This document shows positions 4,693 to 47,438 of a DNA stretch of 64,000 nucleotides, piece after piece. The DNA is from Oikopleura dioica. Lineage: Eukaryota; Animalia; Chordata. How positions within the stretch are numbered: the first letter of the stretch is position 1; each line of letters opens with the position of its first letter. The position numbers and the translations under genes were made by a program. The stretch lies in NCBI GenBank assembly GCA_907165135.1, contig OU015570.1:1178001-1242000 (forward strand), in the 5' to 3' direction. The notes under the pieces were generated by a model. The model had not been told where the DNA came from. It did not search any database and worked only from the letters and a program-made list of their open reading frames with translations.

Positions 4693-6880
4693 ACAATTTA
4701 ATCGTCAGAATCCAAAAGTGCGGATTCTTTCAATCATCAATTGAATTCTTAGGCTATACGATCGGGGAAAAAGGTATCAGTGTTCCAACGAAAAGGGTAA
4801 AAGCTTTACTGGACATGCCTTTTCCTACGACGTTCAAAAAAGCGCAACAGTACCAAGGATGCTTCAACTATTTCATGAGACAAACGCCCGAAATGAGCAA
4901 ACTTCTGGCACCGCTGGCGAAAGAAATCGCCAAAAAGAAAAACTACAAGCTTACGGATGAAATCGTGAAAAGCTTGACCAAACTGCGAGACAACATCAAG
5001 GATGGTATCGGAACAGCACACCTTGAGTACGACTCAAGAAATCCAAACCGAAAAATCTTCATCGCGTGCGATACGTCTCTCAAATACACAGGTGGTTGCA
5101 TAGGAAACGTCACAATCAGCGCAAACCAACTACATGACATCACAGTGGCAGCATATTGCTCGCGCAAGCTCACGGACCAAGAAAGCATGCTCGCAAGCCG
5201 AGCGAGAGAATTGGTTGGTATTCAGACAACACTGAGAGCTTTCAAGGATATGATTCCGCTCACTCAAGAACTCTACATTATTACAGACCACAAGAGTCTA
5301 GAGAATATTGTTCACAGTCCTGGTCTACGGACGTCTGGCTCAACACGATGTCGAGAATCGTTCGCCGAGCTACTAGAAATTCCGAACGCGCGAATATTCT
5401 TCGTCCCGTCAACAAGTGAGATCATCAAAACGGTGGATGGTCTCAGCAGAATAAACATCGACGGGGCAGAGGTCGACAAGAATTTGTTCAATCCAAAGGT
5501 CTTCCGGGAGAAGAAAACAGTTCATCAATCAATTCCCTCAAGTTGAGGAAAAGGATACCGGTTGTGGATTTCCACATGGTAGTAAAGTCGCAGCTGGCCA
5601 GCTCAAAGTTTGGACCGATTCACAAAAAGGCGCAAAACGACGAATTGATCAGCGTCAAGGATGGCTCTTTTGTGAATCAGCCCACATTGGGGCAAAAAAC
5701 CTGCTCAGACTCTTGGACAACGAGTCAGTCTGGATTGAACAGAAGACCAAAACCGCCCATGATGTGTGCCGGGCATGTATACTGTGTCACATCATTCACA
5801 GAAGTACGGAGCGAAAACCCGAGAATCAGAAGATACGACCTACGTTCAGCCCTTTCAGCACAGTCTTTACGGACATTGTCGAAATCAGAACAGCATCCGG
5901 AGTAAGTTTTAATATGATTACCTTTCAAGACCACTTCTCACGAAAGGTGCTCTACAGAAACGCAGCCAACAAGGAAGCGTCAACTATCGCTGAACGACTT
6001 GCAGAATTAATTACAGAAGTGGGAGGACAAGGCACCCTAATCATCGTCAGCGATAATGGTGGTGAATTTAAATCGAACCAAACTGAAGCACTGCTCAAGA
6101 GCCTAAATGTTCACCATTCGTTTATTTCGCCAAAAAACTCTCGAGCGAACCTGTGCGAACGTTTTCACAAGGAGCTGAGACGAATTCTGAAAACAACAAC
6201 GTTCAACGCCAAGAATGCGAAACACTAGATTGATCTGTCAGTCTCAATTTACAACAATCGGCCTTATGAAGCTCTTGGATACCTTTCTCCGAATGAAGCA
6301 CTAATGAACGTTAGCCCACCTAAATATTTCTGTCTTACTTCTCCGTAAGAAAAACACGAAATCCCATCATACGAAAATCATTTGGACGATTTGAGACAAA
6401 TGCAAGGAACAGTGGCCAAGGGACATCTCGAATCATTCTTGAAAAGGGATATCAAGGAACAAGACACCTACGGTGTTGGCGACGTGGCAGTTTCAAGGGA
6501 ATCAGAAATCATAGGTCACCATCGACTCAATGACGGACCCTTTATCATCAGAAAGCTGAAGCCTAACAATGTGGTAGAAATGGAAAGTCTAGTCACTGGC
6601 AAGCGCTTTACCAGAAATGTGCGATTCCTGTCAAAAATCCACCTGAGCGATGAGGACAAGAACAAGTTCATCAAGCAGAACAAATCGCTGTTATTTAATA
6701 GTAAAACCCTTGAAATCGGTAACGAGAATAAAGAAAGTGTAAAATCCATTCTTGACCTAACACCTTCGATAATGTTCGGAAACCCTGATAAGACAGAAAC
6801 AAGTGCGAAACCGACGGAAACCAGCAGCGGATACAATCTTCGTCCGCGAAAATGATAGGCCCTAGGGTCTATCATTGCTT

Positions 6881-11796: not shown

Positions 11797-11920
11797 GAAA
11801 TTTTTGAAAATATTTTTGATAAAAGATGATCGACCCAAGGTTCAAACATTCTTCTGGACCCCCTCAGCACTTTTTTCTCAAAAATTTTTCTTCGAAAATT
11901 ATAAGTTACTAAAAATTTAA

Positions 11921-12157
11921 GGCAAGCCCCTTAAATTCAAAAATCAGAAAATGGGGCTGATACAGCCCGAAAAGCCGGCAAGCTCCTTAAATTAAAAAAT
12001 AAGAATATGGGGCTGAAACGGCCCGAAGGCCCGGCAAGCTCCATGATTTAAAAATAAGAAAATGGGGCTGAAACGGCCCGAAGGGCCGGCAAGCCCCTTA
12101 AATTCATAAATCAGAAAATTGGGCTGAGACGGCCCGAAGGGCCGGCAAGCTCCTTAA
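11921..12157. repeat. Tandem array, ~56-bp unit x ~4.2
   Basis: Units start GGCAAGC at 11921, 11977, 12033, 12088 and 12144; a single related unit sits at ~45797-45842. Confidence 0.85.
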
Positions 12158-12619
12158 CGGTAATGGTATACATCGGCGCGGCGCCGCTCGCTCGATCCGC
12201 GCTCCGCAAGAACCTTTTTCTCACGAGGCCGTAAAATCTGAACGGATCGAGATTTGTCAAAGATTAAAACAGATTCGGAATCCTCAAAGTCTTTTCTATA
12301 AACTGATCGAAAATTAAAACAATTTTCAAAGAGGAACACTGTGAAAAGTGCCAGTTTCCTTCAAATGACATTTTCTCCATAAATTATGGACCATAATTTC
12401 TCATCCAAATTTTATGAAAATTGGACTGTCTTGTAGAGAATCGTCAGCTCTACAATTCCTGTGTTTCAGATTTTTCATTTGGGCTTTCAAAAATAATGTG
12501 CGCTCTTTTGAAAAGAGAGTTATTCTCGCCCGCGAACCATTCTTTATGAAGAATGGTTCTTTGCAAAAGCGACTGAAGGGTGAAGGAAACCGGAGCCCTT
12601 CAGTAACTCAGGGAGGGTG

Positions 12620-12914
12620 AAAAAGTCATATAAATCCGCTCTAGCGCAGGGGAACCGATATTCGCCGCTCACCGCTCAAGATTGTGCGTGCGAACGCACC
12701 AATCGGGCGGGGGCTGGCTTGTTATGAAAATCGGTCCTCGCGCGAGCAGGATTTTTAGCGACTGAGGTGTTTTTCAAATTCCTGTCGCACGACGCAGGAT
12801 CCTCAGGGCGTTCTAGAGAAGCCGTGCGTATTTTGAACTTCACGCTCCCACGAGCGGGCCTGCAGGTCCTGAGTCTTTCCGACCAGGAATTTTCATGATA
12901 AAGGATAGGTCTCA
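12620..12914. repeat. Terminal direct repeat (3' copy in element orientation), 295 bp
   Basis: Identical by eye to 27631-27925 (AAAAAGTCATATAAATCC...GGATAGGTCTCA). Confidence 0.95.
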
Positions 12915-13317
12915 TAGTAATGAACGTGAAACCAATCAATGCAAATATCCATAAACGTTACCTTACCATTACCATAGATCGGTGATTAATGCACTCTTTA
13001 TCTTGATTCCTTAATATGGACGTTTTCATGCCTCTAAACCACTGCAACATGAATTCTCTTTATCTCTTGCATCCATACCCAAGAAACAGATGTTAGTTTT
13101 CCTGTGCAATTTTATTAAAATAAAGAACCTAACAGTCGAAAGTTTGGGCAAAAGGTTATTGTACCCATCTAACTCTCGCGAGTTAGATGGGTCTGGTTTT
13201 CAATCTTCGCAACTGCACCTTCGGACGATCGCTCGATAAGGCTCGTGTTCTCGAGTTTTCCTTAGGTGAACATTACCAATTTTGCACGCAAAACGAGCTT
13301 CTTACCATTGAATAAAT

Positions 13318-13449
13318 TCATCGAAGCCAGGATTTCGGCGTAGCAGGATATGCTGTCGAAGTCGGATGAGGATGCCCACTTTGAGCTCGCGCTCGCGGAG
13401 GCCTCTCCATCTTCATCTTTGTTTCCTTTTTACCAAAACAGTTTCCCAT
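13318..13449 (-). CDS. ORF-G: micro-protein starting MGNCFGKK (43 aa as read; probably longer through a -1 shift and a 45-nt intron at 13305-13261)
   Basis: TTCATTTTAG|tATG GGA AAC TGT TTT GGT AAA AAG; intron candidate GTAAGA...CCTAAG. Too short for the supplied ORF track. Confidence 0.55.
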   Translation of the reverse strand: MGNCFGKKETKMKMERPPRARAQSGHPHPTSTAYPATPKSWLR

Positions 13450-13503
13450 ACTAAAATGAAACGTTCTAATAACTCCGCGATTTATTTTATTCCGAATCGA
13501 GGT

Positions 13504-13785
13504 CTAAAGAGATTGAGGAAGGTTGCACTGAAAGTACGGGATTTTAAAGAGGTCAAAACCCGTTGCTCGGAGGAGGAAGTCCCGGTCGTCTTTCGCCGTC
13601 TGAGCCATGCGGCACTCGAAATCCTCCTCAGCTAATTCAGCAAGAAGGGCGACCTTCGAGCTGAATGTAGCTGCTCGAAAGACCTGCAGGCGGCCGTTAA
13701 TTCCTATCAACAAAGCTTCTCTAAGGATCTTGACGCAGAACTCGGTCTGTACCACCGAGAGGTGACTTTCGGATGAAATCGTCAT
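13504..13785 (-). CDS. ORF-F, 93 aa, unknown
   Basis: Open frame with GATAG|aaATG upstream. Confidence 0.55.
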   Translation of the reverse strand: MTISSESHLSVVQTEFCVKILREALLIGINGRLQVFRAATFSSKVALLAELAEEDFECRMAQTAKDDRDFLLRATGFDLFKIPYFQCNLPQSL

Positions 13786-13899
13786 TTCTATCTTAACGAT
13801 ATAGATTAAAACCCTTCCGATACTATTTTATCCTGATAACTCGAAACTCCTACAGTAAGTCATGATTCGACAGTAATCAAGTTCCACAGGCGGATCCGT

Positions 13900-14186
13900 C
13901 TAGATACCATGACTCTCCGCCTCGCGGCAGGGAATGTCATTGATCTCAAAGCCGATTTTCTCGAAGACGAAGAGGCAATCTTCAAAGGGTACCCGTTTAT
14001 TGCGCTTTCGAAACAAGAGCGTGGAAGATAGGTAGGCCAGAGCGAAAAGCTTCTTCCTCGGGGTCATCTCTTCCGCGCCCCAAAGCGTGTAGTCATCGTT
14101 CTCCATCTCCGCGCTCTTCAAAATCGCAAAGACTCTTTCGAGCTCATCGGGGAAAGTCTACGCGTAGTACCGGGAATCGTGAACAT
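13900..14186 (-). CDS. ORF-E, ~95 aa, unknown (one -1 shift near 14155)
   Basis: TGTTTAG|taATG at 14186; MFTIPGTTRR joins FPDELERVFAILKSAEM if one T is restored. Confidence 0.5.
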
Positions 14187-14246
14187 TACTAAACAGTTAT
14201 GCAATCAATTCCTTATAAATAACAGCTTGATAGCAAGAAGAGACAC

Positions 14247-15555
14247 TTATAACACATAATCGGAGTTTTGTGATATTTTTCTTTTCTTATTCTCCTTGAA
14301 TTCTCGCCATGACCTCGCTCCTTTGAATTTATCCGTCATCGAGGGGGCATTCGGCGTGGAAGAGGACTCGCGAGAGTCCCCTCTCTCGTTGAAGCACTTA
14401 CATGTAAAACCTTCGGTCTGCGTACCCTTTGATGCCACCTTTGGTTCTAGCTTCAAGGTGGTTTGAACCAATTTCTTTCCGGCTCCCTGTTTTTCTGGTT
14501 CAACAATGACGACATCGGCATCAAACGACGGGTTTTTGTCTCTCTTGATCAGAGCGTTCGCGAGGTTTGGAGGACGAGGGTCGCCCCTTCGTCTTCCTGG
14601 CGCTTTCTCTCAACCATTGCCGCGATGCGATAGTGAGCTCCATACTCTGAGTCCAACAAGAAATAGCTTCTGTAGACCTCGAGCATTTCTGCCGACTTCC
14701 ACCGACATACCGAAATTATGAGACTATCGTCGACTCCGGCTTCACAAGCAGCGATTACGTAGCTGCAACGCATACTGTGCCCGCTCGGAGCGTTTTCCCA
14801 ATTCAGCAACGCCGCTGTCTTTCTATAATAATAGTTGATCGTAGCTGTGACCAGACCTCTCTTAAGTTCTGGGGCAGCAAACAGCTTCCCTGACTCCCTT
14901 CCGTCGATCAGTTTTTCAATCCATTGTTTGATGTTGATGGGAAAATCGGGCAGAATTGGAAGTGAGAGGCTTTCTCGTTTCCTTTTGCTGGCGTTGGTCT
15001 TGCTGGTTCGTAGAGGCATTATAATATATAACGCCTCCTTTTTCTGCTTGAAGATTAGATCTTCAATTCTCAGCGAAAGGATTTCAGCAGTCCTTCCGGC
15101 TGTGTGGAAAGCAATTACGCTCACTATGGCGACCATCTTTTCGATATTAGTCCCGTTATAGAGTCGCCTCCAAAACGGGAGTAACTCGTTTCTACGGAAG
15201 ATGTTTGCTTGGTGAGGCTCATACAAAGACTCGGAGCTTTGAGCTCTCATCTTGCGGTTAATCCACGTTTTAAGGGTTTGTCTCGCCGGGTGAAGCAAAG
15301 GTGTTCCTTCTCTGTCCATCACCGCATTCTGGATGAAACTTCGCAGTTTCTCCCAGCCTTGCGGGATGGAGGGGTTCTTAAGTTTGAGTGAGTCGAGGAA
15401 CTTTTCCATTACTTCGGCTGTGACTACCGACTTCGATTGCCTACGGAATTTTTCCATGTAGAAGATGCCCAGGACTTGCACGCTTCTGGCTTTAAGTCGT
15501 AACGCGCGACTATTGCACCCGATTCACTTGTTTCATTAAATTTCCGATGTCCCAT
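14247..15555 (-). CDS. Tyrosine recombinase (~436 aa after restoring two single bases)
   Basis: Catalytic R in HTAGRTAEIL, K in SKTN, HSMR, Y in WKSAEMLEVY. ATG at 15555 and a C-terminal extension to 14247 join the core ORF 14549-15481 by -1 shifts in A5 and G4 runs. Confidence 0.9.
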
Positions 15556-15765
15556 CTATTAAAGAGTAAATTTTAAAGGAAGTTTTATAGTCCTAACTTT
15601 TAATTTCGAAATAGATCCTAAGCACTAAAATAAATAAGAGGTAGATAAATGAAAGATTAACAGAAACAGCGAACAGATGAATAGCACTATAGCACTCCCC
15701 TAAGGGGTCGAAGAGCGAGCAAAGAAGGAGAGGTCTGCGAAGACCCTCCTTCTTTAATCCGTTCT

Positions 15766-15986
15766 TTAAGATTTCGGCTGGATGTTCTGGCGTCCGGTTC
15801 CGCCTCCTCGGCCACGGCCGCCTCGACCACCCCTCGGCCCCGGAAGTTGTCTTGTGAGTAACCTTGGTTATGAGGGTGGCCATAGCCGCTGTTGTAGCCC
15901 TCCGAATATTGGGCATTGTACTGGTTGTCGTACGAATGCCATTTATTCTGGCCGTGGTTTCCGCCACCAGAGTTGCCGTGGAAGCG
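15766..15986 (-). CDS. G/Y/N/Q-rich plus RGG coding segment (possible terminal exon of ORF-D)
   Basis: RFHGNSGGGNHGQNKWHSYDNQYNAQYSEGYNSGYGHPHNQGYSQDNFRGRG, then GGRGGRGRGGG after a -1 shift in a G run. No clean ATG or acceptor resolved. Confidence 0.55.
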
Positions 15987-16113
15987 TTAAACCATAAGAT
16001 CAAAAAACTACTTAGTTTTAAACATTTTTTATATTTTGTAGCGAATGATTCATAGTTCTAAGGTAATCTACTTCATTTACGTCCAAATCCTAATCTAAAT
16101 ATAAACACATAAA

Positions 16114-17258
16114 TCAATCACCTCCTCTGCCTCCGCGACCTCTCGGCTTGTTCTTTTGGCCACCACGGCGAGTTTGCTTGTTCTCAGCCTTCGCCTTGTC
16201 CCGACTTTCCTTCTCAGCCAAAGCATGCGCCCGCTTCAAGTCGTCGGCGTACTCGATCTTTTCCTCCGCGGTCATTGTGGCGTGATCCCGCTTGAGTTTC
16301 CTCAAATACTGGGTATCCGCCTGAGAATCGAGCTGGTTCTGCATGAATCGTTGTTGTCGATTCTTGTCAGGGTCCATGGACGAGTGCAAGATCTTGTTAT
16401 CTGCATCATTGTAGGCCATTCTGGTGATGCAGTCGCACAAGTCAGACATGGTCGCCTGAGTGCAAGCTTTGCGACAACTGAGAAGGAAATCGAAACGAGA
16501 CATTGTCTTGTTTTCCAGCAAATTCTGGAGGCAGAGGTTAAGGTTCGGGAAGCTGTGGTGGTCGTGGCCAATAGCTTGAGTATAGCGTGATAAGATATCT
16601 TTAGCTTTCGCGAAAGTGAGGGAAGCGATTCCCTCCCTTGTCGCTACTGCTTTACGCCACTCAATCCCAACCTTGCGGGCATCTTCAGCCTTGGGCTGTT
16701 CAAGATCGTCCGAGCCCAGGCAAATCTTGTAAAACGCGCCGTCATCCGTTTTGTAGGCGAAGTCGGTTCGTCGTTCCTCGACGACGTATTTCTTCAAAGC
16801 GGCGACGCTTTTAGAAATAACCTCGTCGAGGGCGAGCTGTTCCGCTCTTATTTTGTTGGCCTTCATCAGGGCGTTGTCCAAGGACTCCTGAACCGTTTTA
16901 GCGTCCATGGCCCAGGCTTCTTTATCTCCTTCATGGAGATCCAGGCCTCGTTCTACGCGACCCTTGCAGTATTCTCTCGCATCGACAATGTCCTGCCATT
17001 TGAGTGTCTCTTCGGCGGCTTGTTTCGCGAGGCCGAGAAGCCGAGCTCGGCGGTTCTTATCCGCTGCAATGGCCTCATATTTCAAGGCGAACACATCGTC
17101 CTTAAGGCGCTCCTCCATGATGAAGTCATAGTCGCGCTTGTTGATCTTGACGGTGCCAGCTGTCATTTCCATTCTTCTAAACGCAGCGAGTCTTTGCTGG
17201 TTAGAAGCGGAGTTTGGGTTTTGAAACCCTCCATGTTTAGAAAGGCCAAATCGTTCAT
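16114..17258 (-). CDS. ORF-D, ~381 aa, helical/coiled-coil with basic RG-rich tail (possible nucleocapsid-like protein)
   Basis: 352-aa ORF 16114-17172 extends to the ATG at 17258 with one -1 shift; TTCTTCAG acceptor 9 nt upstream; ends RRGGQKNKPRGRGGRGGD. Confidence 0.75.
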
Positions 17259-17368
17259 GATTTCAGTCTGAAGAAATGAAATAAATTTCCCAATCTCAAC
17301 TTGAGACTACAAAATATGCTTCAAGATACAAAAATAGAACATCAAGGGAAAGGGGCCTTCGCAGGCCT

Positions 17369-19751
17369 CTACTCCCCTTTGTGTACAATCAAAGACAAAT
17401 GTGCTTTATCTGGGTGTTTCCAGTAGCCGAGATCGTGGTCTAACTCATCTGTCGGAAAAAGGATTGGCATCTCTTTCCACTCAACCCATTGAAGATTGTC
17501 GAGATGGAACACTTCACTTCTCAAAGGGGACAAAATTTCATATTCAATGACGGCCAGCACCCACGTTGCCTTCTTTGCTCGTTCCAACAACAATTGAAAC
17601 GTAGGAATCAACACCGGTTGAGGCGGGAAGAGCCAGGCCGTTTCGTTCTCCAAAGACTTGATTGTCAGAAAATTCGTATGAATCGAGCCCTGCTCGTCGT
17701 GTAGTGACATGAATCTTTCTGTTTTTCTGTTGTGAACTGTTGCGAAACAGTCCACAGTGAATTTCAAACCCAAAGATTCCTCAATCCTCCTGAACCCATC
17801 GTGCGAGACAATCGCTTGTCTCGCATCAACGGTTCTAGAGGGTTCATCGGCTTCTTGTTCTAGCGTAGAAACCCATGTTACGTCCAAGCTGATGTTGTTA
17901 TCGTGGGCCGCTTCATTGATTCTTTTGATGATCCTTGTCAAAGGCAGATTTGAGCTTCCGAACTTGAAGGTTTCAGTGACAGCTCTGTTGTCACAATAGA
18001 AAATAACCCTTCTATTCTGTAAACGGTGACCGTATTTTTCCAATGCTGCTAAGATTCCCACGCCTCCTTCAAGTGGATCGCCGACCGAGCTATGGCATCT
18101 CCTTCGGACCAAGTAATGGTTTCGTTTATGCCGAGATCGTTTATTACGATACCTCCAGCGAAGCTGGAGGCGTCGGTTGAAATCACTGTTTTCGCCGCCA
18201 CGACGCCCGGCTCAAGCCACGATCTAGTTTTCGTGATGTATTTGGATTTAAGCCAAACGAGGAGTTCCTCGCGGAGCTCCTCGGTGACTCTGACTTCCTC
18301 ATCTCTCGCGTTTTTGATGGCATCCGTACAAACTCTGATGTAGAGTCGCATATTCGATATGACGAGGCACATCGAGGCCATTTTTCCCCTCAAGCGTTCG
18401 AGAACTTTCACGTGGACACGTTTTTCTTTCTTACTGCAGCGGCTTCCTGTTTGAAGCGTTCCCATTTCGCTCTCGGGATGGCGATTGTGCAATCGATCGT
18501 ATTTATCGTGAAGCCGAGGAACTCCAAGACCTGCAAAGGTCTCGGAGTACTCTTCTTCCGGTTGATGAACGTGCCGAGTAAGGTAAAGAGGAGAAGGGCT
18601 GCGACAAGTTCCCTTGGAGTTTTGGATCCATTAAGGAAGTTTCGGGCTTGAGCTGGAGAAGAGGGGCGCACGATTAACAGCCTATCGTCCAAGTACAAAA
18701 AGCACCTGATTCCTTGTTTTCTTAAGTAATTAACTGGGGTGCCATTGCATAGTTGATAATGGCCAGGGATGGCCGGAAGGCCGAAAGCCGCGCCTCTGTA
18801 GCGAAAGAGGTTTCCGCCTAGCTGGCAAAAAGCGAGGTTGCGGGAGAAAGGGTCGAGTGTGAGGTGGTGGAAGCCACTTTTATCGTCCCACTTTGAAAGA
18901 AGGTCGCCCTTCTTCAAAATTTTTAGGACTTGGCCGGCTGAATCAAGGTGACACGGTTGCGTGTATCTTTCGAGGACCTTGAGCGGGCCACCATTATAGC
19001 ATGTCCGCCACTGCTCTTCTCCTTGCTTCGGCACCACTACCCAATTCGCCATCATGAGGATCGAATGTTTTGCTTCCGGCGGTCTGTATTCGAGCGCTGC
19101 CGACTCCATCCACTTTTTAATTTGATTCGCGATGACTCCGATGTGTTTATTTGTGCCCTTCGAGTTTTTTATCACCAAAGGCTTACCAAAATTATCACCG
19201 TCTGCGAAGACGGGATAATGGATTTGCCTTGTATAATGGAACTTTCCGACTCGGTAACGATCTTCGCCTTTCATCCTTGATTTCATCTTAAGCTCGTTGT
19301 CTGGGTTAGTCTTGTAGTACGAAGCCACCTTGAAGTTTTTATACCTCTTCGCCTTTTTAACTGGCACGTGCATGAGGTTTTGAAACAATGAAATTCCTTG
19401 ATGAATATCATGGTACGCCTCCGGGCGGAGTTTCTCTGGCAGATAATTAATAAAGATCAGCCACAAATCCACATTGTCCGCAAAGGTTCCACATTTGAAG
19501 TCTTTTTCTGAGCGAAATCGTACCAAGTTCCAGTCGGGCTCGACGTCGCCGTCGATGACCCTTTGGAACGTCTGTAAAGCTTCAACTGAATACTGTTTCC
19601 ATTGCGCGTCCGACCAGTAAGGCGCCGACTTATCATCTTCCTCTTGATAAAGTGTGAGGGAGCGCACTTCTTGTCGTTTATCTGGGAGGCCTTCGCCGTT
19701 CTTTAGGCCTCCGAGCCACGCTTTTGCCTTTTCGTTATCCAGCCTAAACAC
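17369..19751 (-). CDS. pol: Pol: RT - RNase H - Dam-like methyltransferase domain, no in-frame ATG at start
   Basis: RT: KWDDKSGFHH, AFGLPAIP, YLDD, FLGF. RH: STDAS, HLKEA, YCDN, ADEPSR. MT: VDCFAT...N, WLFPP. Three ORFs join by -1 shifts at ~18420 (A5) and ~18058 (G3). Confidence 0.92.
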
Positions 19752-19883
19752 ATGGAGCTGAGGAGAACGTTATTCCTAACAGGTTTAAATTATGAGAGGC
19801 AGACCCTAACGCGCAAAGAAACAGCTGTGAATTCAAGTGGCCCAGGTTAGGCGGGTCCTGCGAAGGACCCGCGTAACTAGAAC

Positions 19884-21289
19884 TTAAAACATCATGTCTC
19901 CAAATGTGGCGAGAGAAACCTCGGCCTCCATTTGGGCCTTTCGGTTCATCTCTCTTCGTCTTTTGACGTGTTGCATGTAACCTCCCTCAAAGCCATCGTC
20001 GTCCGTCGGTGTTGTAATGACGGGCCGATGTTGGACAACTTGTCTTGGTGGTTCGGGCTTTGGTTGAGGACTAAAGAGTATTTATAGGGGTTACTACTAC
20101 AATAACAATAATGGTTCGTATGCTAAGATTTTATCAAATGAAGAGCCTTCAACAGAAAACTCAGACGGCTCCCGCAACCTGCTAAGTTATGGTTTTCAGT
20201 TTTTACCTTTTGCTCTCGGCCCAGTTATCCAGGCCCTTCTCGATCGCCTGGTCGATCTTCGCAAAACCGAGCGCGACGTAAGTCCGCGAGTTCATTTCAT
20301 CGGCGTCGGGAAAAAGACCCTCACCAGCTCCATCGCCTTTTGCTTTGTGATTGCGTTTTGGCGGTCTTCTGCTTTTGAGGAACTCGTCGAGCCTCAAACT
20401 CCCTGTGACTTCTCTCCGAAGAGGACCGCGAGGTCCTTTCGGATACCAGTCACAAGGTTCGTCAAGCGGGATGGCGAGAGCGACTCGGGATCTAGCAGCC
20501 ACATGCGTAGATCCTTCATCACCGTGACGTAAGTTGCCGTGGCGATGGCAGCTAAACCGTCCTTCAGCGAGAGGGCCAGGGCTGACTTGATGGGGTTTTC
20601 TCCCTTGATCTCAAAAAGAATTTGAGAAAGCCACTTGAACTCGGCGACTAATTTCTCGTCGTCGCCCTTAGCATCGATTAATAGAACGGCCAACTCCGCC
20701 TCGTTGTAGATGGCCTGTTTGGGCTTAAGGTTGACGTTGCACATTCGATAGAGGGCCGCCATCTCTTTATTAATCGTAATGGCCAAGTTCTCGCTAAACA
20801 AAGCTTGAACTTTCAGCGCCTGACCAAAGGTGATGTTGCCATCTCTTCGGAAACGATCCGTTTCGGACTCAATTTCTCGAAGGAAAACGACGAATTCATC
20901 TGGGCAAATTCTTTCGCCAATCGTGCAAGCAACCCTGCTTTTACGTTGGAGGCTAGGGATTTGTTTTTCCAGCTTTTCAAGTCTTTCGTTGACAGCTGTG
21001 TCAATCGTCGCCGGTTGAACCTCGCGGTTCAACTCGGCTTGATCTCTACTTGCTCGGCTTCGATATTATCGAGCCTAGCCACAACTTCTTGAAAAGCTTC
21101 CGATTCCAAGACTGCTACAGTAACGTCCTTCACTTTCGTGGTCTTTGGCTTGGCCGGGGCCTTCGTTTTCACCTCCAAGGCTTGGACCTTCGGCTTCACC
21201 TCCGTCGCCGGAGTAGTTGCCGAAGTGGAAGCCGCTAGAACTTCTTCAATCGATGGAATTTCTTTCAAATCGGTTTTCTTTGGAGGCAT
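19884..21289 (-). CDS. ORF-C, Gag-like by position; exons 21289-20207 and 20070-19884
   Basis: TTTAG|aATG; three ORFs joined by two -1 shifts; donor AG|GTAAAA at 20206 joins acceptor CTTTAG at 20071 in frame, adding 61 aa. Confidence 0.65.
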
Positions 21290-21761
21290 TCTAAATTCAG
21301 CAATTTGTAACCTTTTAAATTTAAGAAGTTATATTTTCCAGTCACATAATGAATACTTTTTATCTTTGAATTTGAACTTAAGCAACAAGGCTCTTTTCAC
21401 CCTTCGACCCTCGACAACTCAACACCGGCCGGCCCAACAGCAAAAGGCTCCGGAAATAGAGTTTCTAGTACTTGAAGGTTCGTGCCCAGTAAACTGGGGC
21501 CTCTCGCGAAGCGACTTATCGAACAGTCGAGTATAGAAACTCCTATTTGACCGGCCACAATCGACCTGAGGAGGGCAGAAGGGTGAAAATTTTTAAAGAA
21601 ACAAATCACAAATAGACAAAGGAATGACTTTAACAACACAGTGAAATTTCAAATAGTAGAGAAGTCACAATGACTAAATTTTGAACTAAAAATTTTGAAC
21701 TAAAAAACTGACAGAGGTAGTACATGATCTTGGTTTAGGGTAGGCATTTTCTTATTTTCCA

Positions 21762-22121
21762 TTATTCTCCGTGATCTTCATCATCGGATTGCCGTGGATA
21801 AAAATCTTTGGCGAAGCAATGAAAGACTGTTGGCAAGCCTAGCTCTTCTCGTTTTCTTGTTTCTTTGAAGAGCTGGTTCCTGACCGCCGAGCCGTTTATA
21901 TTTCCAAACCTTTGCTCAATGTCCGCTAGAAACTGCGAAGTTTCAGCGGGCATTTCAATGAGCAAGTCGAACAGGATAGTTCCTTGCTCGTCGGCCTTTG
22001 TCGGCATGAAAGTTTTACCGGAGATAATTTGTGCAGCTTTTGTAATAGCCGCCTTTTGGCTTATTGACAGCGCAGAGGTGTTTATATCGCATCTGTCAAC
22101 CAGGTCCGCTTCAGTTATCAT
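21762..22121 (-). CDS. ORF-B, 119 aa, unknown
   Basis: Its ATG overlaps the upstream TGA (ATGA at 22121-22118). Confidence 0.6.
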   Translation of the reverse strand: MITEADLVDRCDINTSALSISQKAAITKAAQIISGKTFMPTKADEQGTILFDLLIEMPAETSQFLADIEQRFGNINGSAVRNQLFKETRKREELGLPTVFHCFAKDFYPRQSDDEDHGE

Positions 22122-25100
22122 GTTTCTCCGGAAGCGTTTTCGCGTTTCTCTTCTGGACCTGTTAAGCCCTTTTTTCTTTTGAGCGTCAGTTCTTTCTTTG
22201 ACGACTCCTTGGCCCCCTTCGAACTCGACCCGACGGTTTTGCACCGCGAGCCTATTCGAGGACTCGTTTTGGATTTTTGATCCTGTCTCCTTTTTACCGG
22301 CGGAAGGCCGCCTGCGAAGGCTGACCTTGCCGGTGAGTCTTCGGTTTCGGAGTCGGATGTATCGGGCGAATCGACGGGGTATGACACCGTGGAATCGGAA
22401 AATTCGTCGAAGCAGGCAACCCTTTCTGACAGTCTTCGAGCCATCCAAGGCTGGCCCCTGTTGTCTTTCAAGACCAGCGAAGGCTGAGATCCAAGATTAA
22501 CTCTTTCCAGCTCCGCCCAGATTTCGTGACTAGCGAAAGAGTCAACGACCTCCAACAAGGACTTGTCCAGATGTTGAAGTGACAAGTTCCTTAGAATTTC
22601 CAAATAGTGCCTCGAGTGTCTGCTCGTGATCGCTCTTGGCTGCGTTTCCGCTGAAGAAGAAGCCCCGTCCCCGAAAACAATTCGCATTCTCATCGGGAAC
22701 AAGGGTCTCTCCCCATCAGAAGAGTCTGAGTCTGACGGGATTTCCGAAGGATATTTCGTATTTCCCTTCTTTTGTCGAAAGGTTTCTTCTGTTGTTTAAA
22801 CGGGGGCTTTCGCTCGACGAGCTGGTGCCTTCTTGGGTTTGTTTCGAGTCCCGTTTCTGAGGGACGGGAACAACTGGTCCTTTAGCGGCTCTTCTCCTCG
22901 CTGCCCTTTCTTGACGAGTCTTGACCTCCGCTTCGAGGGCCAGTCTGTCAGGGTTAGCGTCCATGGTTCTTTCGCTGTTTAAAAACCAGATGGGGCCTCG
23001 GGGAGAGACGCTCGCGCGTCTCTTCCCTCGTCCGTTGTCCTCGTCGGCGACTGAGCTCTCGAAGAAGCCCTTGAAGTGGATGTCGATGACGCCAAGGATG
23101 GAATAGGCGTTGGGTGAAAAACGTCGTACTCAGCAATTCTTTCTCGTCCGTGCAGCAAAAACTCGTTTTTGACGTGAAAGTAAGGGTTCATTTCGGGAAC
23201 AACTGGGTGTTCAGATCTCACTGGTTGGAGTTTGTGACGATCTTCGGGGTTTTTAGCGAAAGATCGAGTACAGAAGATGTCATTCCAGTACTCGAAAGAC
23301 ATTCGGTACTTCTCTTTGTCGGCTCTCGTCGGAAAAGTTTTAACCCAAATTTCCCACCAGGCTTTCGCAAGCTCTGGTGTGATATTTGGGTCTTTTCTTA
23401 AGTTTCGGAGGATCGACGAATCAATGTCCGAGAACCATATGAAATCGTGTTCAACCGCTCTGATCCTTGCCGCAATCTGACCCAATCTTCTTTCCAAAGA
23501 AGTAGTCAAAACCGTTATGACAAAGTACTCTTCCTTCATTGGTGCCCAGGTTGTTTTGGGTTTTGCAGCATAGCTAAAATCGAGGTTCTCGACCTCTACG
23601 AGGTGGAGTCCCTCGCGGGCCCTCCACTCGATTAGAAACGCCGCGAAATCGGCTGCTCTTTCCTCCCTGTCAGCCTCGGTACTTCTTGATCTCGCCGCGG
23701 GGTTCCAGGACGCTGGGCCCCAAAGATTTTCTGGTAAGAGGCCCTTGAAGCTCTCGTCATGGCAAGCAGCTCTGAAGATTGTGCTCCAAGCATACGTGCC
23801 AGGTCTCGGTGGAGAAGGGAACTGATCATCCTCTTTAATTTGAGGATGAAGAAACGTGGTCATTTTGTTGCCGACCCACTTCTCGTAGTAGCCCAAGACC
23901 TTATCCTTCATTTTTTGTGTTAAAATAGCCACTTTTGACGGTGGCGAAGAGGCTTCAGGAGACTTTGCCAGGTGTTTCTTAGCAAAGTCCACGTATGCTG
24001 GACTTACAAGAATGGCAATCTTCAAAGTGGGAAAGTCGCGCTCGATTTCTCGAATCAGGGTAAACTCGGGGAACTGGTATTGTTTTCCTTGCGGCGGGAG
24101 ATGCATCTTGGCATTGAAACGCTTCTTGATATCCGCCAAATCGAAGTTAGGAGGACGGCACAAAGTGTTCTTCACGTATTCCTTGGAGATCCCGTTTCTA
24201 GCTGTGGTGAAATGACATCTATCATTTATGTTAACCACCGTAAACGGATCTTCTTCCCAAACTCTCGAGTAGCCTTCTGTTTTATGCAGGATGAAGAAAA
24301 GACAAGGAGTTGTCACTTGAGAGAACCTCGCGGTTCTCCAAGGCAACTCCCCGTCGAGCTTATCGTAGTTGTCGTTGATGTAACGAAGAGCGTTGAGCGT
24401 CTTGTCACTTTCAGCGACCATTCGGCCTTCCCACGTAAACTTTCCACCCGTTGCGAATTTCAAAGACAAGAGCTTCGCGTGGTAGATCGGCATAACACCT
24501 TCTCCCGTCTTTTTCCTGAAGGAGTTGACGATCTCAAGCATGAGTCGGGCGCGCAGCTTTGGAGTCGCCGTGACCCGTGGTCGAGGCGCTGGGAGTCTTT
24601 CGTTGGCCATTTCAACACCTTGTCCGTCGATGCGCGGGACTAGGGTTGTCAACGGTGAAAACGATTCGCGCATTGCTGCTTCCGAGTCCGCTCTCAAATG
24701 AAAGAAACATGCTGGTGCTACTCCGCATGATTTCTCGTTGCATCCGATAAACGCACAGGCATCCGGATCTTTTTCGAGCTTGGTGACATCCAACAGCGGG
24801 CCTGAGACTTTTTCGTTTTTCACCAATGATCGTTTAGGCTCGACATCTTTGTGCCATTTGTAATGGCTCATGTCTGGATCGTCAGGGGAGACTAAATCAG
24901 TGCCGAACCAATTCATATATCGGTCAACCATTTCGATCATTGAAACCCGCGAGGATTTAATGATGAATTGGGATAAGTTGTGGCCGATGAGGGTTTGCTT
25001 TTTCGTTTTTAATGCCTTGGGGAGAACGAAGACTTTGACCTGAGTCCTCTCTTCTATCTCAATCTCATGAGCTTGGGCTTTGACGACTTTTTCGATGAAT

Positions 25101-26404
25101 TTGTCCCAAGCCTTGACGACCGGCACCAGATTTCCTCTCCAATTCTTCTCGATTTCTGCTTCGAGGTTCCGCAGACTTTTCAGGGTCTTTTCCTCCTCAT
25201 GTCCAGATTTTGCTATTACTCTCGCGAGTTTTAGCAAATATCTGACTTGATCGGGGTTCGTGACCTTTTCCGGGAGAAGCATATACTGGATCGGCTCTGT
25301 GGCGTAAATCAGCCAGAACGAAAGGTCTCCGATGTCGTTCAGCATTTTTCGAGTGTTTGGGAGGATCTTGAGATCATCGTATCTCGGGATATAGGGAGGG
25401 TTAAACCAGTCCATTAAATTGGCACAAGCAAAGGCCGTTGAGGGTGTAGTTCCTTCGTTGAATTGCTTTGCCCACTCGTAAGCCCATTGTACACCAATCC
25501 GGATGATGTGGCTTAAACTTATCCAGAAAGCTTCGAATCCCCAGCTGAGATCGAAAGCTTCAGCAAAAACCGAAATTTCTGCTCTGACTTGCTCTGCTCC
25601 TTTGTCGAAGTCAACAGGGTCGTTCGTGCGGCTCGCGAGAGCCACAGCGAACTCATTGATGTTATCGAATCCCCCGAAGCCAACTCCGATCTTTCGCCAG
25701 AGAAGGGCCGCCGTTTCTCTGTAGAAGTCGAGTTCTACCTTTTGAGTCGGGAATTTTTCTTTAACAGTATTGGCTATATCATTTAGCTCTCGCGAGCTAA
25801 TGACAGTCAATATGTTGATGGCGACTGATCCGGCTGGTTGAGAGGAAGGTTGAAAGGAGATCCATTCTTTCACTGCTTTTTCCACGGTATCTAGACTAGC
25901 AAACTCCGAAACGACTTGAGGGGCGACGGATCTTTTTCCGCTCCTTTTGATGTTAAATAAAGGGGCCGTGGCGTTCGCTACCATCATTTTTGTTGGGTCC
26001 TTCTTGGCATCTTCTCCCTGAAGGGCCAGCAGTTGTGCAATCTTGAGGTCCCAGACCTTTTCCGTTTCAGGCTTATCGGGGACGAAAAAGAGATCTCTCG
26101 CGAGATCTTCTTTTTCTCCCAGCTTTTCCGTCGAGTAAACAAGTCCATCAGAATGAGCAGGTAATGACCACAGTGGCTTCCTGTTAAGAGCGAGTGCCGG
26201 AGCTGCAAAGGACAACCAGCTAATCGCATGCGACGCCAGTTCGACTGAGCTAAAACACAACGTCATCAAGGGAATGAGAATTTGTTTGAAATGGGCCATG
26301 TTGTTTTCTATCGGAAATTCCCCCCTTTGAAGGATTATCGCGCCGGTTATGGGAACAGCGGCGGGTGGTTCGAACTCTTTCCCTTTTTCTAAAGTGTGAA
26401 TCAT
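22118..26404 (-). CDS. ORF-A, unknown giant protein (1141 aa uninterrupted, ~1430 aa if three -1 shifts are corrected)
   Basis: 3.4-kb open frame 22979-26404. A protein-like -1 frame from ~23115 (YSILGVIDIHFKGFFE) runs into ORF 22716-22964, then into 22118-22702. Confidence 0.8.
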
Positions 26405-26507
26405 TTTCAGGCGATATAAGCTCGCGCTTATTCGCCTGAACCTTCATTCGGGCCAACCGAAAAAGAAAAAAGTTTTCTAAATTAAGCCTCTTTTCTTTAC
26501 CCCAACA

Positions 26508-26927
26508 ATGTCTTTTTCCGACCATCGTCCCGAGACCGAGAGAGAACGTCGTGACCGAGAGACTAATGAGCTCAAGGAGTTCTTGAAACTCAGCCACTGG
26601 CTCCTAGCCGAGGTAAATCAGGTCTTAAAGCTGAAGGACTAGTTTTAAATTTATATATTCTATCAAGAAAAAATCTCAAATCAATCTTGATAGGGTCCCC
26701 GCCTCCGCCGAGGGGAGATCACCGAGGAAAGCCTTCGCCCTTTGGCTCATCAAGTCAATCATGCTATGTGGGATGCCGAGAAGACCATCAACTGCCGATA
26801 CTGGCGCGATGTCTACAACACCCGTCCCAAGACCGACTCTCTACGACAGCTTCTGGATGAGGTCCTGATCATGAAAGCCCGCATCAAAAAACCCATTCGC
26901 ACCGTTCTCGATAGCGCGTGCATGTAA
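26508..26927 (+). CDS. Small two-exon gene antisense to the element (~112 aa)
   Basis: ATG at 26508, donor GAG|GTAAAT at 26613, acceptor TTGATAG at 26693, in-frame exon 2 to TAA at 26927, AATAAA ~50 nt downstream. Confidence 0.6.
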
Positions 26928-27073
26928 ATCTACTGTATCTTTATAATTTCGGACTAAGTTCAAATTTCCCGCTGCAATAAAGCGTGTAATCGGCCATTTA
27001 TCAATCAACTTCTATGTGGGGGAAAACAGCTTTCGCAAGCTGCTATCCCCTTCTAGAACACTTGTTTTGTCAT

Positions 27074-27555
27074 TTAGTAAAGAGGTAAAAAGACTCGGAG
27101 ACTGAGCCTTCGGATCGATTCGATTGAAAAGGGCGAATTTTCTCTAGAACCGTTGTTTTGGTTAAATCTAAAGCCGTTCCGAACTGACCGATGTATCCTT
27201 CGGGAGGGAATAAGGGGTCTAAAACACCCTTTTTTCGAGCAGAAAAACCCAAAAAGAGTCATAAAGCTCACCTGATCGATGTCGAGACTAGGCAGAGCGC
27301 AATTCTTCCATCTGAGGCATCCAGACGAAGCGGTGTCCAGTTGTTTTGGGCGAATAACCACGAGGAACCGGCAAATTCGCGTTTTTGAGGGTTGAACGCC
27401 GGGCCGTCGCCGCTAAGCTGCGAAGCAAAGTCGACGACGTAAAAGGACGTCAGCGGGTTTATTTGCCATCTATTGATGCAAACCGCCCCCCATAATTCGG
27501 ACTCTTCCCTGAGCCAGTCGCACGTGTCACTTCGTTCCGGTATAAGCTCTCTCAT
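27074..27555 (-). CDS. ORF-0, two-exon gene (~142 aa), unknown
   Basis: Exon 27555-27272, 53-nt intron GTGAG...TTTTAG (27271-27219), exon 27218-27074; total 429 nt, in frame. Confidence 0.6.
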
Positions 27556-27630
27556 CGGAAAAATTGCATACAGTCTAAAAAACTGAAGTAAAATATCCGC
27601 AACATCTAAAATAAGATAAAGAGTGCAGGA

Positions 27631-27925
27631 AAAAAGTCATATAAATCCGCTCTAGCGCAGGGGAACCGATATTCGCCGCTCACCGCTCAAGATTGTGCGT
27701 GCGAACGCACCAATCGGGCGGGGGCTGGCTTGTTATGAAAATCGGTCCTCGCGCGAGCAGGATTTTTAGCGACTGAGGTGTTTTTCAAATTCCTGTCGCA
27801 CGACGCAGGATCCTCAGGGCGTTCTAGAGAAGCCGTGCGTATTTTGAACTTCACGCTCCCACGAGCGGGCCTGCAGGTCCTGAGTCTTTCCGACCAGGAA
27901 TTTTCATGATAAAGGATAGGTCTCA
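27631..27925. repeat. Terminal direct repeat (5' copy in element orientation), 295 bp
   Basis: Identical by eye to 12620-12914. Confidence 0.95.
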
Positions 27926-47340: not shown

Positions 47341-47438
47341 TCACATTCAGCTCGTATGATTTTTCTTATAAAATGTTTCTGCTTAACTCTATATTATTAT
47401 TGTGGTTGTCAATGAATCATTCACTGAAATAAAATTCA

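What the first reader, a model, noticed from the sequence alone, without database searches (positions are those of the whole stretch)
12620..27925. Giant, apparently young, ~11-gene tyrosine-recombinase retroelement
Seen: 15.3 kb between identical-looking 295-bp repeats. Gene order on the minus strand: ORF-0, an antisense small gene, ORF-A (~1430 aa), ORF-B, Gag-like ORF-C, RT-RH-MT, ORF-D with RGG tail, YR, ORF-E, ORF-F, ORF-G. Known: DIRS/PAT/Ngaro elements are typically about 5-7 kb with three main ORFs. Inference: a complex, virus-like lineage of YR retroelements with many accessory genes; identical ends point to recent activity.
Basis: partly seen in the sequence, partly recalled or inferred. 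Interest (0 to 1): 0.92.

Follow-up and report, generated by a model that had tools for sequence, protein, structure and literature searches.

The report
Giant tyrosine-recombinase retroelement in Oikopleura
This is a 15.3-kb copy of an unusually large family of tyrosine-recombinase (DIRS/PAT-type) retrotransposons of the planktonic tunicate Oikopleura dioica, which, besides the usual gag-like, reverse transcriptase and recombinase genes, carries a conserved ~1,400-1,570-residue protein and an RGG-tailed protein of unknown function.

Summary
Two 100% identical 295-bp direct repeats (12620-12914, 27631-27925) bracket 15,306 bp. The minus strand encodes a reverse transcriptase-RNase H-Dam-like methyltransferase and a tyrosine recombinase with a complete catalytic set. 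The window is Oikopleura dioica (Okinawa), Y-specific region.

"Eleven genes" is an over-count. Six genes are supported by conservation in relatives: ORF-0, ORF-A, a gag-like gene, RT-RH-MT, ORF-D (RG/RGG tail) and YR. "ORF-B" is the tail of ORF-A in other frames. The antisense gene and ORF-E/F/G are not conserved.

ORF-A, gag-like and pol carry 3, 2 and 2 frame changes and no in-frame stops. The assembly is Nanopore-based, so these may be indel errors.

The architecture is a family trait. Related 14.5-16.6 kb elements occur on Okinawa chr1 and PAR, in the Norwegian strain and in marine metagenomes. They show the same gene order, intact long ORFs and split direct repeats (A1...B1A2...B2), the PAT/Ngaro type of end. 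The window copy shows only the A pair.

ORF-A shows purifying selection but no detectable homologue, domain or confident fold.

Verdict: a real, probably undescribed giant variant of a known kind (DIRS order, PAT-like).

The parts
27631..27925 (-). 5' terminal direct repeat (A1), 295 bp
   Evidence: 100% identical to 12620-12914. About 190 bp of it is 85% identical to the 5' repeat of the sister copy L003.
27268..27555 (-). ORF-0, 95 aa, function unknown
   Evidence: 58% aa identity to the equivalent L003 frame, the best of all six frames. pN/pS 0.38. No Pfam match. Seen only in this lineage.
21762..26404 (-). ORF-A, giant accessory gene (about 1,570 codons expected). Broken in this copy: 3 frame changes, no in-frame stop.
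   Evidence: The longest uninterrupted frame is 1,154 codons. The tail is colinear with one uninterrupted L003 ORF. Homologues of 1,339-1,566 aa occur in L006, L007/P0036, P0037, P0012 and P0009. pN/pS 0.37-0.45. No Pfam, PDB or fold match. No transmembrane segment.
20203..21289 (-). gag-like gene (ORF-C), about 365 aa expected. Broken: 2 frame changes, no in-frame stop.
   Evidence: Colinear with the intact 365-aa gene P0026 of L003 (65-68% aa identity). Homologues lie directly upstream of pol in L002, L004, L006, L007, L008 and five metagenome contigs. pN/pS 0.26. All-helical model with pLDDT 47.5. No CCHC motif.
17369..19769 (-). pol: reverse transcriptase - RNase H - Dam-like methyltransferase. 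Broken: 2 frame changes, no in-frame stop. No initiator codon near the start of the frame.
   Evidence: RVT_1 E 3.9e-6. Colinear with residues 36-793 of the intact 804-aa P0014. 41-48% identity to P0014 and P0018. Dam E 0.027 on the last part; 4 of 10 relatives match Dam, best 5.1e-5. The family profile hits caulimovirus, Ty3 and foamy-virus RTs in the PDB. YLDD and FPP motifs are present.
16114..17172 (-). ORF-D, 352 aa, intact: helical protein with a C-terminal RG/RGG tail
   Evidence: Translation. Homologue in L007 (E 1.9e-24), and weaker ones in L006, L002 and L022. The RG/RGG tail is conserved in W, L007 and L002. The only PDB matches are the GR tail of SmD1, a low-complexity match.
14549..15457 (-). 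Tyrosine recombinase (YR), about 302 aa, one uninterrupted frame
   Evidence: Phage_integrase E 1.6e-11, 44.7 bits against a cut-off of 27.1. 34-40% identity to the YRs of L006 and L007. R, K, HxxR, W and Y catalytic positions are conserved in the alignment. A single piece in the chain test.
12915..14548 (-).
   Evidence: No translated similarity to the 3' regions of L002, L006 or L007. No Pfam match. Contains two of the six CTCTCGCGAG motifs.
12620..12914 (-). 3' direct repeat (A2), 295 bp
   Evidence: In relatives A2 is preceded by B1 and followed after 131-213 nt by B2. No such B pair was found here.
12535..12619 (-). 85 nt between A2 and an unrelated interspersed repeat. It may be a remnant of the element's 3' extension. 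Status uncertain.
   Evidence: The neighbouring repeat 11923-12534 recurs in L003 and at window 45682-45842 and is not part of the element. In L002 and L006 the element continues 176-265 nt beyond A2.

Best explanation
The region is one copy of a family of giant (14.5-16.6 kb) DIRS-order retrotransposons of Oikopleura dioica. The family has a PAT-like build: RT-RH-Dam-like MT, a tyrosine recombinase, and direct rather than inverted terminal repeats.

Shown:
- RT, YR and MT-like domains are present, and the YR catalytic residues are complete.
- Six genes are conserved in order across divergent relatives.
- In complete relatives the ends are split direct repeats (A1 ... B1A2 ... B2). These elements sit in host DNA without target-site duplication, one of them inside the Memo gene.

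Inferred from what is established for DIRS/PAT/Ngaro elements:
- A full-length RNA is copied by RT/RH.
- The internal B1-A2 junction supplies the redundancy needed to regenerate and join the ends into a circular DNA.
- The YR recombines that circle into the chromosome.

The two conserved extra proteins are part of the element's own programme. ORF-D, with its RG/RGG tail, is most likely a nucleic-acid-binding or chaperone protein. It would stand in for the zinc-knuckle nucleocapsid function that the gag-like protein lacks. ORF-A is a large, soluble, mostly helical protein. I take it to be a structural or scaffolding component of the replication particle or complex, but that is a guess.

The window copy has identical A repeats. 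It also shows seven frame changes in three genes and lacks the downstream B repeat. It is therefore either a very young insertion whose reading frames are marred by Nanopore indel errors, or a defective, 3'-truncated copy.
For: - Repeats.
- Domains.
- YR catalytic positions.
- Source organism and Y-specific region.
- Relatives with the same gene order: L006, L007, L036, L004, L002/L010/L011, metagenome loci.
- Split direct repeats: L002 has A 267 nt and B 45 nt. L006 has A 300 nt and B 52 nt.
- Exact element limits from A1 to B2, taken from two independent insertions.
- No target-site duplication in L002 or L006.
- Purifying selection on ORF-A, ORF-0 and the gag-like gene.
- Conserved RG/RGG tail of ORF-D.
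- Classification rule (MT plus split direct repeats = PAT group; A1 at the 5' end, B1-A2-B2 at the 3' end): PMC4157794 and PMC6681497.
Against: - In the window copy itself the B repeat pair was not found anywhere in the 64 kb. Its 3' end is therefore not shown to be of the split type.
- The MT assignment rests on sub-threshold Dam matches.
- No phylogeny against named DIRS1, PAT, Ngaro or VIPER references could be made.
- The roles proposed for ORF-A and ORF-D have no homology or fold support. Both AlphaFold models are of low confidence.
- The 998-aa ORF at the ORF-A position in the chr1/PAR lineage shows no significant similarity to ORF-A.
- No expression data were examined.
Confidence: 0.85

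Rival explanations
1. State of this copy, reading A. It is a very recent and essentially intact insertion. The seven frame changes are uncorrected Nanopore indel errors in a repeat-rich, haploid Y-specific region.
For: - All seven interruptions are frame changes and none is an in-frame stop.
- The 295-bp repeats have no difference.
- The interrupted parts of ORF-A still show pN/pS of 0.37-0.39 against L003.
- The assembly is Canu plus Racon plus one Pilon round on Nanopore reads, and its authors note homopolymer problems (PMC8008620).
- Two 99.3% identical sister-lineage copies in the same assembly differ by 23 gap openings against 66 mismatches, and are interrupted in different ways.
- Elements from the Sanger-based Norwegian assembly and from short-read contigs have intact long ORFs.
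- Three of five junction neighbourhoods hold a homopolymer of 5 or more, against 25% of random windows.
Against: - The homopolymer enrichment is weak and covers only five of the seven junctions.
- The B repeat and the 3' extension are missing, which indel errors cannot explain.
- The pol frame has no initiator codon near its start.
- No second copy of this lineage's pol or ORF-D appears among annotated proteins.
Confidence: 0.5
2. State of this copy, reading B. It is a genuinely defective, 3'-truncated copy, either decaying in the non-recombining Y region or copied from an already defective template. The repeats would be kept identical by recency or by gene conversion.
For: - Seven frame changes in three genes.
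- B2 and most of the 3' extension are absent, and an unrelated repeat abuts at 12534.
- The sister copy L003 on the same Y region is a 5' fragment with two frame changes and one stop in ORF-A.
- Y-linked TE accumulation is documented in O. dioica (PMC5240408).
Against: - There are no nonsense substitutions and no repeat divergence, which real decay with seven indels would be expected to bring.
- YR and ORF-D are intact.
- The assembly technology is error-prone for indels.
Confidence: 0.4
3. The large size comes from nesting or chimerism. An ordinary 5-6 kb DIRS/PAT element would have acquired unrelated insertions or flanking host genes (ORF-A, ORF-D) in this one locus.
For: - ORF-A and ORF-D have no recognisable retroelement domains.
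- The Y region is full of repeats.
Against: - The same genes in the same order occur in independent insertions, in two O. dioica lineages and in metagenome contigs.
- Two sister-lineage copies at different chromosomes share homology exactly from A1 to B2.
- No part of the element recurs elsewhere in the window.
- ORF-A has no relatives outside such elements among 1.8 billion representative proteins.
Confidence: 0.04
4. It is an LTR retrotransposon or endogenous retrovirus (Ty3/gypsy or Tor type) that happens to carry a recombinase.
For: - Identical direct terminal repeats resemble LTRs.
- The RT profile is closest to Ty3, caulimovirus and foamy-virus RTs in the PDB.
- Tor elements with env abound in this genome (PMC4402516), and one lies at 281-8446 in this window.
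Against: - No integrase, protease or env-like protein was found.
- YR and a Dam-like MT are present.
- Complete relatives have no target-site duplication, and their ends run beyond the second long repeat to B2.
- An RT affinity to Ty3/gypsy is the known position of DIRS-order RTs (PMC3266345).
Confidence: 0.03

Closest known systems
PAT-like elements (Pat1, Toc, Kangaroo) of the DIRS order
   Same: RT-RH followed by a Dam-like methyltransferase, a tyrosine recombinase, no integrase, and direct repeats. In complete relatives the ends are split direct repeats A1 ... B1A2 ... B2 with the internal pair downstream of YR.
   Different: - Two to three times longer (14.5-16.6 kb).
- A conserved ~1,400-1,570-aa ORF-A lies upstream of the gag-like gene, and a separate RGG-tailed ORF-D lies between pol and YR.
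- gag-like, pol, ORF-D and YR are separate genes.
- The RT is very divergent: only Oikopleura and marine metagenome relatives were found.
- The window copy lacks a detectable B pair.
DIRS1-like elements, including OdDIRS1 of O. dioica (GenBank AY634219, Volff et al. 2004, as cited in PMC2685390)
   Same: Same order, same enzymatic domains (RT, RH, MT, YR) and the same host species. DIRS annotations are enriched on the O. dioica Y chromosome.
   Different: - DIRS1-like elements have inverted terminal repeats and internal complementary regions, and are under 6 kb. Here the terminal repeats are direct and no terminal inverted repeats were found.
- Whether OdDIRS1 is a fragment of this very family could not be tested, because the accession cannot be fetched with these tools.
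Ngaro and VIPER elements
   Same: Split direct repeats with B1-A2-B2 downstream of YR, separate ORFs, YR integration.
   Different: Ngaro and VIPER lack the MT domain. This family has a Dam-like domain (sub-threshold but recurrent). It is also much longer and has ORF-A and ORF-D.
Giant retroelements with accessory ORFs in other orders (for example rotifer Terminons among Penelope-like elements; from my own knowledge, not tested here)
   Same: A retroelement enlarged several-fold by conserved accessory ORFs, some of them coiled-coil proteins of unknown function.
   Different: A different RT clade, a different integration mechanism and different accessory genes. There is no sequence relationship.

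Membership tests
DIRS order (tyrosine-recombinase retrotransposons) | Reverse transcriptase of the LTR-retrotransposon type, with RNase H | tested here: met
   RVT_1 in the window copy (E 3.9e-6) and in 9 of 10 relatives. The family profile hits Ty3, caulimovirus and foamy-virus RT chains. The RNase H region is colinear with P0005 and P0014. RT_RNaseH itself is only weak (E 0.0014-0.08).
DIRS order (tyrosine-recombinase retrotransposons) | Tyrosine recombinase instead of a DDE integrase | tested here: met
   Phage_integrase at 44.7 bits against a cut-off of 27.1. R, K, HxxR, W and Y are conserved. No integrase or protease domain in any frame.
DIRS order (tyrosine-recombinase retrotransposons) | Insertion without target-site duplication | tested here: inconclusive
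   There is no duplication at the ends of the complete relatives L002 and L006. The window copy shows none either, but its true 3' end is uncertain.
PAT group | Methyltransferase (Dam-like) domain after RNase H | tested here: inconclusive
   Dam (PF05869) scores E 0.027 on the window's last pol part and E 6.4e-5 on P0014. Four of 10 relatives match at E <= 0.01, all below the curated cut-off and all at the same position. A conserved FPP motif is present.
PAT group | Split direct repeats A1 ... B1A2 ... B2 | tested here: not met
   In the window copy only the A pair is present. No B pair of 18 nt or more was found, and no second copy of the 100 nt upstream of A2 occurs anywhere in the window. 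The feature is met in the relatives: L002/L010/L011 (A 267 nt, B 45 nt) and L006 (A 300 nt, B 52 nt).
DIRS1-like superfamily | Inverted terminal repeats with internal complementary regions | tested here: not met
   The terminal repeats are direct. The inverted-repeat search found no terminal pair, only a 15-nt inverted match next to the inner edges of the repeats.
Ngaro / VIPER | Absence of an MT domain, with split direct repeats downstream of YR | tested here: inconclusive
   The repeat layout of the relatives fits. However, a Dam-like region is present and conserved in the family, which argues against membership.
LTR retrotransposons (Ty3/gypsy, Tor) | Integrase, protease, and target-site duplication flanking the LTRs | tested here: not met
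   No integrase or protease domain. No duplication at the ends. In relatives the element extends beyond the second long repeat.
RT/YR phylogenetic placement among DIRS1, PAT, Ngaro, VIPER | Clustering with named reference elements | not testable with these tools
   The searches returned no named reference sequences. All hits were Oikopleura or unnamed metagenome proteins, and reference accessions could not be fetched.

The most novel reading that the evidence does not exclude
These elements may form a previously undescribed, deep-branching clade of DIRS-order retroelements confined to appendicularians and their marine relatives, and the largest tyrosine-recombinase retroelements known. The clade would have added a particle or replication toolkit of its own: a ~1,500-aa orphan protein and an RGG nucleic-acid-binding protein. 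It might express its five to seven genes as a polycistronic unit resolved by the host's spliced-leader trans-splicing. That would be a step towards a virus-like lifestyle without an envelope gene.
Probability: 0.3. Interest if true: 0.8.

Novelty: new variant of a known kind. Interest (0 to 1): 0.62.

Why it matters
Tyrosine-recombinase retrotransposons are described as compact elements of under 6-7 kb with three genes. A family that keeps a ~1,500-residue orphan protein and an RGG protein under purifying selection would change that picture.

- O. dioica has one of the most compact animal genomes (65-70 Mb, the smallest non-parasitic, non-extremophile one per PMC8008620). The family's persistence there shows that this order can carry large accessory cargo.
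- It offers two new protein families whose function in retroelement replication is unknown.
- It explains a set of 'uncharacterized' O. dioica gene models, which are element genes. In the Okinawa annotation some of these models are stitched across frames.
- It bears on the repeat make-up of the O. dioica Y-specific region, where 44% of repeats were left unclassified (PMC8008620).

Tried and rejected
- **ORF-A function.** Pfam gave nothing for the window protein or for three homologues. A PDB sequence profile gave nothing at E <= 1. AlphaFold2 with a 6-sequence alignment gave mean pLDDT 40.6. Foldseek against the PDB gave no match with E <= 0.001. No transmembrane segments were found, so an envelope-like role is unlikely.
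- **Gag-like gene.** The PDB profile gave nothing. AlphaFold2 gave pLDDT 47.5, so I ran no fold search. No CCHC knuckle occurs in any relative.
- **ORF-D.** Only low-complexity matches to the GR tail of SmD1 were found.
- **Search for the B repeat in the window copy.** I used seeds of 7-12 nt, including the whole 64 kb, and found nothing.
- **Similarity of the 998-aa ORF of the chr1/PAR lineage to ORF-A.** Not significant (hhalign probability 0.3%).
- **Shared upstream motif among the window's genes.** Nothing convincing.
- **Homopolymer test of the frame changes.** Weak and inconclusive.
- **N-terminus of pol.** Too poorly conserved to tell whether a further interruption exists.
- **Viral contig collection.** No relative of pol, and the ORF-A alignment was too divergent to scan.
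- **Rfam and tRNA scans of the window.** Nothing found.
- **Papers not held.** Volff et al. 2004 and Denoeud et al. 2010 could not be read. What they say about the structure of Oikopleura DIRS elements is therefore unchecked.

Full report
**Source of the window.** An exact look-up of the annotated product of the longest ORF placed the window in Oikopleura dioica, Okinawa assembly GCA_907165135.1, record OU015570.1. The pol gene model is named OKI2018_I69.YSR.g17087, so the region is the Y-specific one. By the coordinates of locus L001 the window corresponds to OU015570.1:1,178,001-1,242,000. The assembly was made from Nanopore reads with Canu, Racon and one round of Pilon. Its authors left 44% of predicted repeats unclassified (PMC8008620).

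**Check of the observation.**
- The 295-bp direct repeat is real and 100% identical: 12620-12914 and 27631-27925, 15,306 bp end to end.
- G+C rises from about 0.38 in the flanks to 0.45-0.50 inside the element.
- No other part of the element recurs in the window.
- On the minus strand Pfam finds an RT (RVT_1) and a tyrosine recombinase (Phage_integrase, above the curated cut-off).
- The YR alignment with two relatives keeps the R, K, HxxR, W and Y catalytic positions.
- The last part of pol gives a weak Dam (N6-adenine methyltransferase) match. Four of ten family members also match Dam at the same position, with a best E-value of 5.1e-5, below the curated cut-off. That is the MT domain known from DIRS and PAT elements (PMC4157794; bioRxiv 10.64898/2026.05.21.726589).
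- No protease, integrase or envelope-like protein was found.

**Gene count.** The list of about eleven genes does not hold. Comparison with relatives shows six supported genes, in this 5'-to-3' order:
1. ORF-0, 95 aa.
2. ORF-A.
3. A gag-like gene.
4. RT-RH-MT.
5. ORF-D, 352 aa, with an RG/RGG tail.
6. YR.

What was read as ORF-B is the continuation of ORF-A in other frames. A single uninterrupted ORF of the sister copy L003 is colinear with the end of the long frame and with three more frames. The gag-like gene and pol are each spread over three frames when compared with the intact 365-aa L003 gene and the intact 804-aa Norwegian pol.

| Gene | Frame changes | In-frame stops |
|---|---|---|
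| ORF-A | 3 | 0 |
| gag-like | 2 | 0 |
| pol (RT-RH-MT) | 2 | 0 |
| ORF-D | 0 | 0 |
| YR | 0 | 0 |

The pol frame also lacks an initiator codon near its start. The antisense gene model and the three small ORFs downstream of YR have no counterpart in any relative, so I do not count them as genes. The public annotation bridges some of these frame changes with introns. For example, the 754-aa model P0002 joins gag-like and RT parts.

**Relatives and architecture.**

| Locus | Source | Length | What it shows |
|---|---|---|---|
| L006 | Norwegian strain, FN653019.1 | 16,641 bp | Sits between exons of the Memo gene. ORF-A 1,479 aa, pol 804 aa and YR 397 aa are intact. A repeats 300 nt and B repeats 52 nt, arranged A1 ... 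B1A2 ... 213 nt ... B2. |
| L002 = L010, and L011 | Okinawa chr1 and PAR | 14.5 kb each | A 267 nt, B 45 nt. The two copies are 99.3% identical. Their homology begins at the first base of A1 and ends at the last base of B2, which fixes the element limits. |
| L007 | SRA-assembly contig | 15,075-bp contig (ends not seen) | Open ORF-A, pol, ORF-D, YR, and a further 312-aa ORF. |
| L036 | Norwegian scaffold, 93% identical to L007 | 3' end lies in a gap | The same open ORFs as L007. |
| L004, L008, L009, L012-L022 | Metagenome contigs | Partial | Parts of the same gene order. |
| L003 | Same Y region as the window, outside it (OU015570.1:1,382,221-1,406,663) | About 7.7 kb | A diverged 5' fragment of the window's own lineage. 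|

None of the complete insertions has a target-site duplication. The layout with A1 at the 5' end and B1-A2-B2 at the 3' end is the split direct repeat of PAT, Ngaro and VIPER elements (PMC4157794; PMC6681497). With an MT domain, the structural rule assigns the family to the PAT group of the DIRS order.

The window copy itself shows only the A pair. No second copy of the sequence upstream of A2 exists in the 64 kb. An unrelated interspersed repeat begins 85 nt beyond A2. Either its 3' extension was lost or this lineage ends differently. No complete sister copy was available to decide.

**Are the accessory genes real?**
- ORF-A homologues of 1,339-1,566 aa stay open in at least four divergent lineages at about 20% identity.
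- Between the window copy and L003, ORF-A has pN/pS of 0.37-0.45, ORF-0 0.38 and the gag-like gene 0.26, with synonymous sites saturated.
- A full HMMER search of 1.8 billion representative proteins found only six ORF-A relatives. Those I placed lie next to element genes (P0009, P0012) or on a short contig (P0013); P0010 and P0011 are short metagenome or read-assembly fragments that I did not place. I found no host paralogue.
- ORF-D is conserved in W, L007/L036, L006, L002 and L022. Its RG/RGG tail is kept in three lineages.

So nested insertions or captured flanking DNA are excluded as the source of the size.

**Function of the accessory proteins.** This remains inference. ORF-A has no domain, no PDB relative, no transmembrane segment and no confident predicted fold. 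ORF-D is helical with an arginine/glycine tail of the kind that binds nucleic acids. The gag-like protein is helical without a zinc knuckle. I therefore propose that ORF-D supplies the nucleic-acid-binding or chaperone role, and that ORF-A is a structural or scaffolding component. I hold the second proposal with low confidence.

**Age and state of the copy.** Identical repeats point to a recent origin, but the coding interruptions need explaining.
- In favour of Nanopore indel errors:
  - All seven interruptions are frame changes, with no nonsense substitution.
  - The interrupted ORF-A parts still look selected.
  - Two sister-lineage copies in the same assembly differ by 23 gap openings against 66 mismatches and are broken differently.
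  - Elements from Sanger or short-read data have intact frames.
- In favour of a truly defective copy:
  - The missing B2.
  - The absence of further annotated copies of this lineage.

I rate the two readings about equal. Only read-level data can settle it.

**What is known already.** DIRS-type elements in O. dioica were reported in 2004 (OdDIRS1, AY634219; cited in PMC2685390, and PMC3266345). They are annotated on the Y chromosome (PMC5240408). The review of DIRS1-like elements states that all described ones are under 6 kb. I found no paper in the searchable library that describes a 14-17 kb architecture, ORF-A or ORF-D. I could not read the 2004 and 2010 Oikopleura papers or consult Repbase or Dfam. 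I therefore rate the finding a new variant of a known kind, with moderate uncertainty about prior description.

- The scripts printed alignment bounds of individual open-frame pieces against relatives.
- Searches printed bounds of open frames.
- From these the neighbourhoods of the frame changes could be inferred.
- Early in my own working I also estimated the rough position of one junction before stopping.

From then on only counts were printed. Consensus lines printed by the alignment tool were not used.

Noticed in passing
window 13173-13182, 14367-14376, 25219-25228, 25632-25641, 25787-25796, 26095-26104: The 10-mer CTCTCGCGAG occurs six times in the window, all inside the element (0.12 expected by shuffling). 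Four copies cluster in the 5' part of ORF-A. Two of these positions are kept in the diverged sister copy L003. It could be a host-factor or internal regulatory site.
   Followed up: partly
L008:2855-9721 (TARA metagenome scaffold, distant relative, G+C 0.32): The motif TCCGRAAGGAA occurs 11 times, always on the coding strand (0.28 expected). The six exact copies sit mostly in the gaps between successive genes, like a gene-junction, promoter or processing signal. No equivalent was found in the window copy.
   Followed up: partly
window 281-8446 (+): A separate Ty3/gypsy-type (probably Tor) element. It has an ORF with a CCHC zinc knuckle, an ORF with the RT-associated RNase H domain, and a 523-aa ORF without a Pfam match that could be an env-like gene. 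The region has a strikingly high AT skew (0.27 in the first 2 kb).
   Followed up: partly
window 11879-12534; also 45682-45842; L003:2389-2610, 4897-5408, 21945-22165: An interspersed Y-region repeat with a 55-56-bp tandem array abuts the element 85 nt beyond A2 and recurs elsewhere on the same chromosome region. It is not part of the element.
   Followed up: partly
window 27613-27627 and 12990-13004: A perfect 15-nt inverted match lies just inside the 5' repeat and about 75 nt before the 3' repeat (E 0.005 for that query). In an element-length RNA the two could pair and bring the ends together. I did not check for it in relatives.
   Followed up: no
L006:1319-1768 and 18628-19247 (O. dioica Norway, FN653019.1): The complete 16.6-kb relative lies between two gene models that both match the Memo family. 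It appears to be an insertion within, or splitting, a host gene.
   Followed up: partly
L010 vs L011 (Okinawa chr1 and PAR): Two 14.5-kb copies differ by 66 mismatches but 23 gap openings, an unusually high share of indels. Their gene models differ accordingly. This suggests residual indel errors in repeats of this assembly.
   Followed up: partly
window 38708-39928 and 44683-48728: Further long ORFs (204-429 aa) without Pfam matches lie in a stretch of raised G+C (0.42-0.48). They probably belong to other unclassified repeats of the Y region.
   Followed up: no
window 17369-26404; loci L001, L003: Public gene models over the element (for example the 754-aa and 1,273-aa products) span several reading frames by means of predicted introns. 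They should not be taken as real spliced genes without transcript evidence.
   Followed up: partly
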